This document shows, one piece after another, positions 9,350-28,160 of a DNA stretch of 64,000 nt. The translations under genes and the position numbers were made by a program. Positions within the stretch are counted from its first letter, which is position 1. Each line of letters begins with the position of its first letter. The stretch lies in assembly GCF_023055435.1 (NCBI RefSeq), contig NW_025964383.1, positions 46,066,001-46,130,000 on the forward strand, written 5' to 3'. This DNA is from Haliotis rufescens. Lineage: Eukaryota. The notes beneath the pieces were generated by a model. The model worked only from the letters and a program-made list of their open reading frames with translations, made no database searches and was not told the origin of the DNA.

Positions 9350-10152
9350 CTATGTTTCAACTGGAGTAGAATTATAATCAGCTTGAACGAGAAGTTTGTG
9401 AAAGCGATGTCTGAAATCCTCCCCAAGATCCTCCATAGCCTCAGCTACTTTTGATTTCTTAAGGCCACGAACTGTTGAACTCAAGGATTGCAGGAGAAAC
9501 AGTGATATTGGTAAAGAGAGAACGCAAAACATCAGTCCACCGAGTCCAACCATATGATGGTTATTGGTGTAGACTGCCAGAGATTTGGCAGCGTCTTCGG
9601 ATGTCTTGAAATTCAAGACCGCGGTTTCCGTAGCCTCTCCTTGTCCGCAATGCAGAAAAAGGCAGACATCGAGGATCAATGTTACTGCAATCGATATAAA
9701 CTCACCATTGATACATTTCATATACTTCCCAGCATGGATCTTGCGTTGAATTGAACAATGTAATGAAAGCACTTCGACTCGGAAATCATCATCGTCATCC
9801 ATGTGGGTGACAAACTTGATTGCATTTACAAATATGTCAAGTTTCGACTCCACATCATCCCAAATGGAATTATTTGAAATAATCAAGTACATTTCTAACA
9901 CAAGATTGACTAGTCCACACACAACTACAGTTGTTGCACATGACTTCAAGAAGGCAGAAGTTGAAACATCCACGAAAACACACATCAGTCCAAGTAGTAT
10001 AACGAACACAATGGCGGAGACCTGCACACAGATACAGAACAGCTTGAGCAATGTAGGAAGGTAGTTGGATGTATCATACTTCTTGGCAAGTTCAGTTACA
10101 TCAGTGGGTACTTTGTCTACTATCTGTATCAGGCGTTGTCGTCGAATTTCAG
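9350..10152 (-). CDS. cassette gene B copy 1: hydrophobic, highly diverged APOL-like membrane protein (large terminal exon; 5' exon uncertain)
   Basis: open frame after acceptor ttccctcag|ct; three hydrophobic segments; frame conserved in three copies; ungapped similarity to gene A in two blocks. Confidence 0.75.
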
Positions 10153-10841
10153 CTGAGGGAAGAAATAAACAAATAATTATTTTACATTTTATGATCAACA
10201 AGAAATTACCTTGAAAAGTTACCAATATACGTTTTAGGCTCAATATCAACATGACATGGTGTCGGTTAACCTGCCGAGACATCACGACTCGACGTTACGC
10301 CCAGTAAAGTCACCACATGTTAACTTGTTGTCAGATGAATTGAGGGAAATGTGTTTTGTCTTGTGAGTGTTCGTTTCGGATTGGCTCCCATACGATGTAC
10401 GGTGCCTTGTGGCCTTGATCCGTTTAAAAGAAAATGGTGAAATTAATAATCTTAACAATAGTGCTGATTTACATCACACAAATCAAATCAATATTACGAT
10501 TAACGTCTGTGTTCTTCTGTTTTCAAGAAGCAGCATTTTGTTTTGGCCAAACAAGACAGTTTGTGTCCTAGAATATCTAGATAATTTCCCAATAACCTGA
10601 ACTAGTAACGCACGTGCATACAGAGATCGATTTCATTAAACCACTTCAAGAGGGCCCCTTTTCAATGAGTCAAATTCAATACTCGAGTCAAAAGACCTAA
10701 CAGACAATCATGAACCATTTTGAAAGTATTTCAACACCTACAGTTACTACATGAAGTGACTAATGCTATACAGCTGGATAGGGGAAGGACAATAACTGTG
10801 ACATTAACTCCACTAGTCAATTACTAGGCTCTATTCTAAGT

Positions 10842-12015
10842 TCAATTTATCTTGCAGGTTATCAGTGATTCTATGCAAATGAACTTGCATGTTTGTTTTG
10901 ACGTAAAGCAGACATTGTACGTAAAGCAGTGAACATGACAAAGCACAAACCATTCATTTTCTCCAAATGTATTGCCATATTTCGGATCTCCACTGCAGTT
11001 TCAGATGGCGTGTTCTTGTGGATCTTTATGCTGTTAGACATCATAGTGTGCAGATCCAGTGGCACAGTCAACACCGACAGCACAACTCCCCCGACCTTCA
11101 TGGCTTTGGCCCCCGTCTCCATCACGTCCATCATCGTCTTCCCCACTGCCAACGTGGCCCGAGCTGCGACTGCCCCTGCAACAGCTGTTGTCCTGGCAGC
11201 AGATCCGCCCGCCTCTGCTGCTGTCTTCAGCCCACTGAGGATCAGTTCCAGGGTCACCTGACTCTCACTTTCTCCCAGGATGTCGATTTCCTGTAGTTGA
11301 AAATATGTTGCTCTATTTACCGACTTTTGATCAATTTATGTATGATATATATAAATTCCCATTAGCCAAGAGGTTACATTAAACTCCTTCACAAATCTTC
11401 ACAGTTTGATCCCTGTATGTTCTACGTTGTCATCTCAATTCTGAAATTATAACCTTGCTGCACTAACAGACACGTGATTAAGTGGCTGAAGAGAGGTTAA
11501 AATACAGAGTCGATAACAAAAACGAAAGATTACAAACTGACAGAAAAACAACCAAATATTTAAAAGATTACTTCAGTGATCCTATTGCGAAGTTCATGGC
11601 TGTTATTGGAATTCACACTCTCAAGGAGGCTGGCCAAGTCTGTAACAGTTTTCTGATAGTCATCAATCTTGGCTTGAGCTTCTGTCATCGTTTTGCTGTT
11701 GATGACCTTGTCAGCAATGGTTGTCGCCAGTCCACCAAGACCACTGGATACACCAAGAGCAACGCCAGCTGCGCTCTTCCCTAGGGATGCTCCAAAGGTG
11801 AAGGGGGCTGCTGCTATTCCTGCTACAGTTAAGCCTGTAGCTGCGATCCCACCTGATGCGAAGGCAGTCTTGGCGATGTTCATGTCTCGTTGCTTGACAT
11901 CCAGTTCTTCTGCTAGGTGCTTTAGAGCGTCCACCACCTCCTGCTTCTTCCGTTCCTCGTCCTGTATGCATCGCAGTATATCGGCCACGAGTTTCTGGAC
12001 GGAGCCTCTGTCCAT
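10842..12015 (-). CDS. cassette gene A copy 1: apolipoprotein L-like; exons 12015-11572, 11290-10951, 10870-10842
   Basis: LKHLAEELD..NIAK..GGIAATGLTVAGIAAAPFTFGASLG is the APOL pore-domain hairpin signature; C-terminal GGVVLSVLTVPLDL..S..A.EIR; GT-AG introns in phases 0 and 1 (last exon less certain). Confidence 0.88.
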
Positions 12016-12504
12016 GTTGCTGTAAGATTAGATGTTGAACGTCACTTGATGCTTGAGGGCGTACCTAGCAGAAAATTAACGATTGCAGCAGTGAACAGTC
12101 TGAGTGTGAAGATCAACTGAAATATGTTGTCAAAATAAACCTATGAAGACACAATGCCATTTAGAAAGTGGTCAAATGTAACAAATGTTATATTTAGGAT
12201 AACACTTTCTGAATAAAGTACAGATTCTTGTACGGGAGTGTGGCATCTAATCGCCAGCACACAAAGTCAGTGATCTAACACAACAAGCCACTGTGGCTTT
12301 CACTGGCGATTTGGTGCCTCACTCTGACAATGTGGGTTCGAATCCCGGACAGTGAAGGTTCCTCCCTTACTATCTGCTTTTCTTCCATCTTGCCTCAGCA
12401 CATGATTGTCCATGGCTTTCAGTAAAATACAATCATTGCAGGTAGATAACCTCTGTATGCTAGATATCCGTGATGCTACTATGCCTGTTTAGTTCATATG
12501 TGGA

Positions 12505-12847
12505 AGATATAGAGCATCTCACCCGAGTGTCCTTTGATATCAAATAAATCAGCACGAGTTGATATCATTTGATATCAAAAGACACGAGGGTGAGATTTTA
12601 TTTATCATCCAACATCATTCTTCTAACTTCTTCAGTTTGTAGACAGTAATAGGCAGTGTCTTAAGTGTAACAAGTACTGCTAACAGCTTCAGAAGCAGAT
12701 CCATTAGTTATGTCATTTGATTTTGACACCACAATAGTCTGCAAAGCATTGTGATGCAATTTCTTTGCAGTGATATCAACACTGCAGATATCGCTTGATC
12801 TCACCCAAGCGATATCTCCTGTGGGAGCCAGTTTTGGATGATAAATC
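12505..12847. mobile_element. non-autonomous hairpin-headed element
   Basis: atctcacccgagtgtcctttgatatcaaat / atttgatatcaaaagacacgagggtgagat stem, plus atttatcatccaa / ttggatgataaat inverted pair. Confidence 0.65.
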
Positions 12848-26524: not shown

Positions 26525-26587
26525 AGAATATGAACGGGTAATTTACCAGGGGAGTTAATATCACAGTTATTGTCCTTCCTCTGCCCT

Positions 26588-26761
26588 GAGTCAAATTCAA
26601 TAGTTAAGTCTAAAATCCTAACAGACAACCATAAACTATTTTGAAAATAATTTACAATTTAGAGTAACTAGATGTACTTGAAGTGACCAGTGCTGGTCAC
26701 TTCAAGTACATCTAGTTACTCTAAATTGTAGGAGTTTAGACTTAACTATTGAATTTGACTC
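26588..26761. repeat. near-perfect palindrome (38-bp arms 26653-26690 / 26693-26730, 2-nt loop, plus outer arms)
   Basis: tacaatttagagtaactagatgtacttgaagtgaccag-tg-ctggtcacttcaagtacatctagttactctaaattgta. Confidence 0.95.
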
Positions 26762-27201
26762 ACTTGAGTTTTGAAAAGAGGGCCCCTCTGAAGTATTTTA
26801 GTGAAAACGATATCTGCATGCACGTGTGCTGTGTGTTTTAGGTTATTGAAATATTATCTACATGTACAATGACGCTTTCTTTCTTGTTAGGACAGAACAA
26901 AATGTCGCTTTTTTTAAAACAGAAGCACACAGACGTTAATCGTGAATCAGCACTTAAGCCACTTTTAATTAGATTATTTATTTCACCTTCTTTTTGACAC
27001 AGATCAAGGACACAAAGCGTCGTATTTTATTGATGAAACAGCAAGTTAGCATGTGGTGACTAAACTCGGTGTAAAGTCGTAATGTCTAATCAGGTTACCC
27101 AACACCATGTCATGTTCACATTGAGCCTGAAAACACTAGAAAAGGTAATTTCTTGTTGATCATCAAATGGTAAATAATTATCTTTTTATTTCTATCCTCA
27201 G

Positions 27202-28160
27202 CTAAAATTCGCCGACAACGCGTGATACAGATAGTAGAAAAAGTACCTGCTGACGTAACTGAACTTGCCAGGAAGTATGATACGTCCAACTGCCTTCCTA
27301 CATTGCTCAAGCTGTTGTGTATCTGTGTGCAGGTCTCCGCCATTGTGTTCGTTATAATACTTCGACTGATGTGTGTTTTCGTGGATGTTTGGTTTTCAAC
27401 CTCTGCCCTCTTGAAATTATTCACAGCAACTGTAGTTTTGTGTGGACTAGTTATTCTTGTGTTAGAAATGTACTTGATTATTTCAGATAACTCCATTTGG
27501 GATGATGTGGGGTCGAAACTTGACAAATTTGTGAATTCAATCAAGTATGTCACCCGCATGGATGAAAATGAGTCTCTTCGAGCTGAAGTGCGTTCTCTTC
27601 ATTGTACAATTCAACACAAGATCCATGCTGGGGAGTATATGAAATCTAGCAACAGTGAATTTATATTGATTGCGGTAACATTGATTCTAAATGTCGCCCT
27701 GTTTCTGCATTGCTGGCATGAAGAGGCTACAGAAACTGCAGTCTTGAATGTAGAAGCATCTGCCCATTCTCTGGCAGTCTACACCAATAACCATTCTCTG
27801 GCAGTCTACACCAATAACCATCATATGGTTGGACTCGGTGGACTGATGTTTGGTGTTCTCTCTTTACCAATATCACTGTTTCTCCTGCAATCCTTGAGTT
27901 CAACAGTTCGTGGCCTTAAGAAATCAAAAGTGGCTGAGGCTTTGAAGAATCTTGGGGAGGATTCAGATATCGTTTTCACGAACTTCTCGTCGGAGAGGGA
28001 TGGTTGGATCATAGGTGAAATCCTCCCATATGTACCATGCTTGCCTAAACTAGACATCATATCGAGTGTCACCCATTTAACAGCTAGATCACATCGTCAG
28101 ACTCTACACAGTGAGACGTTCTTTGTCCAGACAGACCTTCAGGTGAAATCGTCTGGATAA
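27202..28160 (+). CDS. cassette gene B copy 3: diverged APOL-like protein with a 27-nt internal duplication and frameshifted C-terminus
   Basis: acceptor tatcctcag|ctaaa; HSLAVYTNN twice; 1-nt loss at gattcaga plus ~130-bp deletion reads into former 3' UTR. Confidence 0.65.

What the first reader, a model, noticed from the sequence alone, without database searches (positions are those of the whole stretch)
9350..28160. Triplicated two-gene cassette: APOL-like gene A always paired with a cryptic, highly diverged APOL-like gene B
Seen: three copies of [A, ~700 bp, B] on the same strand. B is not recognisable at first sight but aligns without gaps to A in two blocks. Block 1: GVSSGLGGLATTIADKIINSKTMTEAQAKIDDY vs VVVCGLVNLVLEMYLIISNNSIWDDVESKLDKF (8/33 identical). 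Block 2: MKVGGVVLSVLTVPLDLHTMISNSIKIHKNTPSETAVEIRNMAIHL vs VGLGGLMFAVLSLPISLFLLQSLSSTVRGLKKSKVAEAMEDLGEDF (10/46 identical). B replaces A's Gly/Ala-rich hairpin with bulky hydrophobic and Cys residues and adds an extra hydrophobic segment (FILIAVTLILDVCLFL). Known: vertebrate APOL1/APOL3 are membrane-permeabilising innate immune effectors. Inference: the pair could be a two-component membrane-attack module (soluble A + membrane-anchored B) or an effector with a linked regulator. Co-duplication alone may also just reflect proximity.
Basis: partly seen in the sequence, partly recalled or inferred. Interest (0 to 1): 0.9.

Follow-up and report, generated by a model that had tools for sequence, protein, structure and literature searches.

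The report
One abalone ApoL gene, not two
The supposed pair of neighbouring genes is a single three-exon red-abalone gene, already in RefSeq as an uncharacterized protein: an ApoL (pore-former-like) domain followed by an abalone-only, very hydrophobic tail whose last 60 residues still resemble the end of an ApoL domain.

Summary
The repeats are real, but they are not two-gene cassettes. Each "A + ~700 bp + B" unit is one gene. A is coding exons 1-2 (Pfam ApoL, 64 bits). "B" is coding exon 3, joined by a phase-1 intron of about 800 bp whose GT/AG sites are conserved in all six genomic copies.

Three Haliotis rufescens RefSeq proteins (528, 530 and 579 aa) map residue for residue onto the three window copies. 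An H. asinina orthologue (532 aa) has the same A|B junction. Three RNA-like runs cover the exons and give zero depth over most of intron 2 and part of intron 1. The exon 2-exon 3 joint itself was not displayed.

Copy 1 lies on the minus strand, not the same strand as the others. Both assembly gaps lie outside every coding exon.

B has no Pfam hit. In 1.84 billion representative proteins it has a single relative, so in that library it appears only in Haliotis. Block 1 alone is at chance level.

Best reading: a membrane-anchored ApoL protein whose C-terminal half may be a degenerate second ApoL domain. Function is untested.

The parts
14545..14944 (+). Copy 2 (LOC124149961): non-coding 5' exon
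   Evidence: RNA-like contig X4 record 23 joins 14545-14944 to 16587-16922. A GT donor follows 14944 (ACAG|GTAAC).
16591..17038 (+). Copy 2 coding exon 1 (ATG at 16595): ApoL domain, first part, with the Gly/Ala-rich hairpin
   Evidence: PF05461 E=1.8e-17. Equals P0002 residues 1-148 exactly. Joint 17038->17321 seen in contigs of X1 and X2.
17321..17660 (+). Copy 2 coding exon 2: ApoL domain, C-terminal part; ends in phase 1 at the donor G|GTTTGT
   Evidence: PF05461 positions 210-289. Equals P0002 residues 149-261. Donor conserved in six copies.
17661..18461 (+).
   Evidence: Zero depth in bins 17796-18347 in three RNA-like runs, while DNA run X15 covers them. Identity between copies drops here to 78-92%.
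18462..19270 (+).
   Evidence: Equals P0002 residues 262-530 exactly. Acceptor cctcag|CT conserved. No in-frame ATG before the first hydrophobic segment. RNA-like contigs cover it and the 3' UTR to at least 19787.
11572..12015 (-). Copy 1 (LOC125377568) coding exon 1
   Evidence: P0004 residues 1-148, exact
10951..11290 (-). Copy 1 coding exon 2
   Evidence: P0004 residues 149-261, exact; donor conserved
9350..10152 (-). Copy 1 coding exon 3 ('B') with stop codon
   Evidence: P0004 residues 262-528, exact
25339..25779 (+). Copy 3 (LOC124149960) coding exon 1
   Evidence: P0005 residues 1-147, exact; PF05461 E=2.7e-16
26057..26396 (+). Copy 3 coding exon 2
   Evidence: P0005 residues 148-260, exact; PF05461 26.6 bits
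27202..28160 (+). Copy 3 coding exon 3 ('B'), with a different, longer C-terminal tail after a 1-nt length difference near 27960
   Evidence: P0005 residues 261-579, exact. The 1-nt gap relative to copies 1 and 2 is shown.
20065..20214 (.). Assembly gap 1, downstream of copy 2's stop codon, in or past the 3' UTR
   Evidence: N run. Its flanks match the other palindrome arm in the same order (I7 and I4). No coding exon is touched.
24202..24398 (.). Assembly gap 2, upstream of copy 3's ATG exon
   Evidence: N run. Flanked by a 300-nt direct repeat at 98% identity, 22381-22680 and 24520-24819. No coding exon is touched.

Best explanation
Each cassette is one gene of the red abalone Haliotis rufescens. 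It has a non-coding 5' exon and three coding exons and encodes a protein of about 530 residues.

The last ~60 residues of that half (GLGGLMF.VLSLPISL...SKVAEAMEDL) are a diverged copy of the C-terminal motif of the ApoL domain, placed at the same distance from the start of the domain. The most likely origin is therefore a tandem duplication of an intronless ApoL gene that fused with its neighbour by splicing. The second copy then degenerated into a constitutively hydrophobic module.

Inferred function, not shown: no N-terminal signal peptide is evident by eye, so the hydrophobic half probably anchors the protein permanently in a cellular membrane and holds the ApoL domain at the membrane surface. 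There it could act as a channel or as a membrane-perturbing defence effector.

The gene was amplified to six copies within 265 kb: two subtypes, arranged as an inverted pair-of-pairs plus one direct pair.

The confidence given (0.85) is for the single-gene reading with an ApoL domain plus a hydrophobic C-terminal half. The duplication origin of that half stands at roughly 0.55-0.6, and the function is inference only.
For: One gene:
- RefSeq proteins P0002, P0004 and P0005 map exactly onto exons 1, 2 and 'B' of copies 2, 1 and 3.
- The exon 2 donor G|GT and the exon 3 acceptor cag|CT are both phase 1 and in frame. They are conserved in all six genomic copies.
- The exon-3 frame is closed by a stop just upstream of the acceptor, and its first in-frame ATG lies inside the first hydrophobic segment.
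- The read-through tails after the exon 2 donor differ between copies and end at different stops.
- Three RNA-like runs have zero depth at 17060-17243 and 17796-18347 but cover all three coding exons, while a DNA run covers everything. Depth in the edge bins fits exon ends at about 17660 and 18462.
- H. asinina P0001 (532 aa) has A and B contiguous, reading ...HLEKVN|ANIRRQR....

Distribution:
- B hits six places in the genome, each 1.8-2.7 kb downstream of an A exon on the same strand.
- The other 21 ApoL hits lack B. All 15 of those fetched are single ORFs that end right after the domain.

Coding status: the ORF is intact in six paralogues and in H. asinina, and dN/dS is 0.4-0.7.

Similarity of B to ApoL:
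- A-HMM scores of 9.8-11 bits, 0 of 2000 shuffles.
- An HMM of unfused paralogues only scores 9.2 bits, 0 of 2000, aligning HMM positions 215-278 with B 182-248.
- hhalign P=0.005.
- Profile Smith-Waterman z = 6-8, A columns 214-253 against B columns 212-251.
- Smith-Waterman scores of 81 and 70 for P0003 and P0005 over about 150-170 collinear residues, 0 of 1000 window shuffles.
- Four hydrophobic cores with Kyte-Doolittle maxima of 2.1-2.6.
Against: - The exon 2->exon 3 joint was not shown directly. The joints table printed 15 of 579 rows, and no listed contig bridges the intron.
- Both protein models come from the same kind of automatic annotation pipeline.
- Pfam ApoL gives no hit on B even at E<=10.
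- phmmer with B finds no ApoL protein other than the Haliotis fusion proteins that contain B itself.
- Composition-adjusted BLASTP gives only E=0.022 for one copy and nothing for another.
- Without Block 2, the remaining ~200 residues of B show no significant similarity to A.
- AlphaFold2 models are of low confidence (pLDDT 41 and 48), so there is no structural support.
- The function, membrane topology and any role in immunity are inference only.
Confidence: 0.85

Rival explanations
1. One reading: A and B are two separate, co-duplicated genes that form a two-component module or an effector-regulator pair.
For: The two ORFs are separated by about 800 bp and are always adjacent. If exon 2 is read through, a stop codon follows.
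Against: - B has no start codon at its 5' end and begins at a conserved acceptor.
- There is no RNA-like coverage between the two that could be a 3' UTR for A or a 5' exon for B.
- The splice phases match.
- RefSeq models in two species join the two parts.
Confidence: 0.04
2. One gene, but the C-terminal half is not derived from ApoL. It would be a captured or de novo hydrophobic exon, and the Block 2 resemblance would be convergence between helix-forming membrane segments.
For: - No Pfam ApoL hit on B.
- Three quarters of B shows no significant similarity to A.
- hhalign probability is only 7%.
- BLASTP gives E=0.022 and E=2.
- The protein-atlas neighbours are generic multi-pass membrane proteins.
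Against: - Two ApoL profiles, one of them independent of the fused genes, hit the same ~60 residues, with 0 of 2000 shuffles reaching the score.
- The match sits at the same domain-relative position: 214 in A against 212 in B.
- The two halves are nearly the same length, 261 and 268-269 residues.
- Type II paralogues align collinearly over about 150-170 residues, z = 7-10.
Confidence: 0.35
3. One locus with two products: besides the fused mRNA, an A-only isoform made by retention of intron 2 or early polyadenylation.
For: In run X2 the depth in bin 17612-17795 (7.8) is about twice what an exon end at 17660 predicts. Read-through of exon 2 reaches a stop within 10-42 codons.
Against: Depth is zero from 17796 in all three RNA-like runs, which leaves no room for a 3' UTR. 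The read-through tails are not conserved between copies. Contig depth is not quantitative.
Confidence: 0.12

Closest known systems
Vertebrate apolipoprotein L family (APOL1, APOL3, APOL6; Pfam PF05461)
   Same: The N-terminal 261 residues match the ApoL profile over positions 64-291 of 298. They include the hydrophobic helix-loop-helix and the C-terminal hydrophobic helix. By inspection there is no signal peptide, as in the intracellular APOLs (from my own knowledge).
   Different: There is an extra C-terminal half of 268 residues with four strongly hydrophobic helices, not found outside Haliotis. Function is untested. A role in pore formation or immunity is assumed by analogy only.
Single-domain ApoL-like paralogues of the same abalone genome (15 fetched of 21 further ApoL hits on other contigs)
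   Same: They share the ApoL domain at 27-40% identity to A. Their C-terminal motif is the one that B's end resembles.
   Different: They are intronless single ORFs of about 250-385 residues that stop just after the domain. They have no B half.
RefSeq models LOC124149961, LOC125377568 and LOC124149960 (H. rufescens) and an unnamed H. asinina protein
   Same: They are identical to the three window genes, so the gene structure is already in a public annotation.
   Different: They are annotated only as 'uncharacterized protein'. The possible tandem-ApoL nature of the C-terminal half is not described there. Three literature searches listed no title or abstract on ApoL genes in abalone; the papers themselves were not opened.
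ClyA-family alpha pore-forming toxins (NheB/Nhe L1 6tao, MakE 6w08)
   Same: There is a weak sequence match of A residues 35-139, the helices flanking the hydrophobic hairpin, at E=0.045.
   Different: The match is below significance and was not followed up. It is a lead only.

Membership tests
ApoL (Pfam PF05461): the A part | Profile match above Pfam's gathering score (25.9 bits) | tested here: met
   Exon 1 scores 64.2 bits. Copy 3's exon 2 scores 26.6 bits. Full-length P0001 scores 80.1 bits over profile positions 65-291 of 298.
ApoL (Pfam PF05461): the B part | Profile match above, or even near, the gathering score | tested here: not met
   No ApoL hit on five B sequences at E<=10 or at E<=1.
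ApoL-derived repeat (internal duplication): the B part | Significant, collinear similarity of B to ApoL domains of the same lineage | tested here: inconclusive
   The C-terminal ~60 residues pass: 9-11 bits, 0 of 2000 shuffles with two HMMs, and profile SW z = 6-8. The other ~200 residues do not. hhalign gives P=0.005 but a probability of 7%.
ApoL-like fold: the B part | Structural similarity to an ApoL domain | not testable with these tools
   The AlphaFold2 models have pLDDT 41 (B alone) and 48 (full length), too low for a fold search. Both are all-helical.
Two-gene cassette or two-component module | Two independent transcription units, each with its own start codon | tested here: not met
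   B lacks a start codon and begins at a conserved acceptor. The splice is in frame. RefSeq models join A and B. There is no RNA-like coverage in the spacer.
Pore-forming or membrane-permeabilising effector | Demonstrated membrane permeabilisation, or induction on infection | not testable with these tools
   Only presence in transcript-like contigs of three runs is shown. There are no condition labels and no assay.

The most novel reading that the evidence does not exclude
The C-terminal half is a whole second ApoL domain whose amphipathic helices have been converted into permanent transmembrane helices. That would make this the first described tandem-ApoL protein, in which a degenerate copy serves as a built-in membrane anchor or partner for an active copy. 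It would be a single-chain version of the two-component idea, born and amplified within abalones.
Probability: 0.45. Interest if true: 0.5.

Novelty: new variant of a known kind. Interest (0 to 1): 0.35.

Why it matters
It replaces an attractive but wrong reading, a conserved two-gene membrane-attack cassette, with a simpler one: a lineage-specific ApoL protein with a hydrophobic C-terminal half, amplified to six copies in one 265-kb cluster.

ApoL genes are membrane-active innate immune effectors in vertebrates, and their invertebrate relatives are essentially unstudied. A natural fusion of an ApoL domain to what may be a degenerate copy of itself would be a useful test case. It could show how soluble-to-membrane pore-formers become resident membrane proteins. 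It also marks a candidate defence locus in a farmed and endangered mollusc group.

The gene models are already public, so the value lies in the interpretation rather than in a new gene.

Tried and rejected
- Pfam on B at E<=1 and E<=10: nothing relevant.
- Exhaustive phmmer of B against 1.84 billion representatives: only the H. asinina orthologue.
- Word-indexed searches with the B region and the A region of the full-length proteins: only the same five Haliotis proteins. No tandem-ApoL intermediates from other taxa turned up.
- Protein atlas: neighbours are generic membrane proteins and recognition is below the tool's threshold, so it is uninformative.
- AlphaFold2 of B alone (pLDDT 41) and of full-length P0002 (pLDDT 48): too poor. 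I ran no fold search, because low-confidence models give meaningless matches.
- PDB sequence search: only sub-threshold hits to NheB and MakE.
- Rfam on the window: no match.
- Block 1 as independent evidence of homology: rejected, chance level.
- A possible 61-nt mini-intron inside B (GTGAGT at about 18916 to the AG at about 18976): rejected. Its removal would shift the frame into a stop, and the RefSeq proteins read straight through it.
- Whole-protein work used only proteins returned by the tools.
- Complex prediction was not used, because A and B are one chain.
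Full report
**What is in the sequence.** The region holds three copies of the same unit. Each has two ORFs that together make an ApoL domain, then about 800 bp, then a long hydrophobic ORF. Copy 1 (9350-12015) is on the minus strand. 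Copies 2 (16595-19270) and 3 (25339-28160) are on the plus strand.
- Copies 1 and 2 are arms of an inverted repeat at 93-98% identity.
- Copy 3 is a direct repeat of copy 2 at 89-95%'s ungapped blocks. Per segment it runs from about 80% in intron 2 to 97% in exon 1.
- A is a clear ApoL domain: PF05461 scores 64.2 bits on exon 1 and 18-27 bits on exon 2.
- B has no Pfam hit at E<=1 or E<=10.

**Assembly gaps.** The window's N runs are at 20065-20214, 24202-24398 and 50276-50474.
- The first lies 795 bp after copy 2's stop codon. Sequence on both of its sides matches the other palindrome arm in the same order (I7 and I4).
- The second lies 941 bp before copy 3's ATG and is flanked by a 98% direct repeat (D1).
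- All nine coding exons map exactly outside the gaps, so no reading frame depends on them.
- I did not infer the missing letters.

**A and B are one gene.** Reading the DNA of copy 2 gives the following structure.
- Exon 1 ends at ACTGAA|GTAATC (17038).
- Exon 2 starts after ctacag at 17321 and ends at AATG|GTTTGT. Its last base is 17660, in phase 1.
- The B ORF is preceded by ttatttctttcctcag| and starts at 18462 with CT GAA ATT. The split codon is therefore G+CT = Ala, and the frame continues.
- The exon-3 frame is closed by a stop just upstream of the acceptor. Its first in-frame ATG lies inside the first hydrophobic segment, so B cannot start translation on its own.
- Both splice-site pairs are conserved in all six genomic copies.
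- After the exon 2 donor, the copies diverge by indels and reach different stops.

**Protein database evidence.** An exhaustive phmmer search of B against 1.84 billion representatives found one protein, P0001 of Haliotis asinina (532 aa). B matches its residues 267-529. Its first half is an ApoL domain (80 bits), and the junction reads HLEKVN|ANIRRQR.

A word-indexed search added four H. rufescens RefSeq proteins of 528-579 aa. Three of them map residue for residue onto the window:
- P0002 is copy 2: 16595-17038, 17321-17659 and 18461-19267.
- P0004 is copy 1.
- P0005 is copy 3.

The window is therefore H. rufescens (contig of 49,480,045 bp). The fused gene structure is already public, annotated as "uncharacterized protein".

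**RNA evidence.** Of four runs laid on 14300-19800, X15 covers every bin and behaves as DNA. X1, X2 and X4 have zero depth at 17060-17243 and 17796-18347 but cover all three coding exons, so they behave as RNA.
- Contigs show the joints 14944->16587 (a non-coding 5' exon at 14545-14944) and 17038->17321.
- Depths in the edge bins 17612-17795 and 18348-18531 fit exon ends at about 17660 and 18462.
- No room is left for a 3' UTR of an independent A, or for a 5' exon of an independent B.
That step therefore rests on the models, the splice logic and the coverage.

**Distribution in the genome.** B occurs six times, all on one contig between 46.05 and 46.31 Mb. Each copy lies 1.8-2.7 kb downstream of an A exon on the same strand. 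One of the six has a TAA two codons before the usual stop.

The other 21 ApoL hits lie elsewhere. All 15 that I fetched are single ORFs that end just after the domain, with no B.

The six genes fall into two subtypes:
- Type I: copy 1, copy 2 and L017.
- Type II: copy 3, L016 and L018.
- Their order is II(-) I(-) | I(+) II(+) ... I(+) II(+). That is an inverted duplication of a I-II pair plus one direct copy.

**Coding status.** dN/dS is 0.06-0.39 for exon 1, 0.3-1.0 for most pairs in exon 2 (few differences), and 0.4-0.7 for exon 3. The B half is therefore coding but only loosely constrained. The ORF is also kept in H. asinina at 55-60% identity.

**Is B ApoL-like? Evidence for.** An HMM of 20 ApoL domains scores 9.8-11.0 bits on three B sequences, and 0 of 2000 global or windowed shuffles reach that (maximum 7.5). 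An HMM built only from the 15 unfused paralogues, and so independent of the fused genes' own A, scores 9.2 bits, again 0 of 2000. It aligns HMM positions 215-278 with B 182-248. Further results point the same way:
- hhalign gives P=0.005.
- A profile-profile Smith-Waterman gives 51.5 against 25-27 +/- 4, z = 6-8. It aligns A columns 214-253 with B columns 212-251, which is the same place in both halves.
- In type II paralogues the pairwise local alignment extends collinearly over about 150-170 residues, with scores of 81 and 70 and 0 of 1000 windowed shuffles.

**Is B ApoL-like? Evidence against.**
- With Block 2 removed, the remaining ~200 residues, including Block 1, are at chance level.
- Composition-adjusted BLASTP gives E=0.022 for one copy and nothing for another.
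- Pfam ApoL is blind to B.
- The protein atlas offers only generic membrane proteins.
- AlphaFold2 gives all-helical but unreliable models, pLDDT 41 and 48, so I made no fold search.

My reading is that the C-terminal ~60 residues of B are ApoL-derived. A whole-domain duplication is the best explanation, at roughly 55-60%. It is supported by the equal lengths of the halves (261 and 268-269 residues) and by the fact that B is a single exon, like the intronless paralogues. It is not proven.

**How it probably works (inference).** I see no N-terminal signal peptide by inspection. The ApoL half has only mildly hydrophobic Gly/Ala-rich helices (Kyte-Doolittle about 1.5). The C-terminal half has four cores at 2.1-2.6.

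The protein is therefore probably an integral membrane protein. Its C-terminal half would anchor it, and its ApoL domain would sit at the membrane face as a channel or membrane-perturbing module. Nothing here tests activity or induction.

**Comparison and novelty.** The gene is a member of the ApoL family through its N-terminal half, where the membership test is met. Its C-terminal half fails the Pfam test and is found only in Haliotis in the libraries searched. Three literature searches listed no title or abstract on ApoL genes in abalone; I did not open the papers.

Another (s1-816632) noted the inverted duplication, which one search confirms. The result is a new variant of a known kind, of moderate interest. 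The two-component cassette that earned the 0.9 score does not exist.

Noticed in passing
G000:C605 46.05-46.31 Mb (window copies plus L016, L017, L018): The six ApoL-plus-tail genes form two subtypes arranged II(-) I(-) | I(+) II(+) ... I(+) II(+). An ancestral two-gene pair seems to have been duplicated once in inverted and once in direct orientation.
   Followed up: partly
window 16595-19270 vs 25339-28160: Copies 2 and 3 are more alike in the 5' half (exon 1 97%, intron 1 87%) than in the 3' half (intron 2 80%, exon 3 88%). Synonymous divergence is 0.09 in exon 1 against 0.19 in exon 3. This may reflect gene conversion over the ApoL exons or faster change in the tail.
   Followed up: no
window about 27960-28160: Copy 3 has a 1-nt length difference from the other copies near the end of exon 3. 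Its RefSeq protein therefore ends in a different tail, about 49 residues longer than copy 2's protein (579 aa against 530). Whether this is a real allele or an assembly error is unknown.
   Followed up: no
L017:2682-3479 (G000:C605:46285681-46286484): The type I copy at 46.285 Mb has a TAA two codons before the usual stop, a trivial truncation.
   Followed up: no
window 15036-15403, also 14300-14483, 15772-15955 and 16140-16507: Very high-copy repeats lie in the first intron of copy 2, near the palindrome centre. Summed contig depth is 1e5-5e6 in every run. Opposite-strand joints occur at 16223-16231 / 16372-16373. These are probably transposon or MITE sequence, and they swamped the joints table.
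   Followed up: no
window 22381-22680 and 24520-24819: A 300-nt direct repeat at 98% identity brackets assembly gap 2. The assembly may be redundant there.
   Followed up: no
P0002 residues 35-139 (window exon 16595-17038): There is a weak sequence match (E=0.045) of the ApoL hairpin region to ClyA-family alpha pore-forming toxins NheB (6tao) and MakE (6w08).
   Followed up: no
window 40194-42410 (+): A 738-aa ORF consists almost entirely of ankyrin repeats (Ank_2, E=1.9e-146). A short ORF at 31242-31883 (-) has a weak SRCR_2 hit.
   Followed up: no
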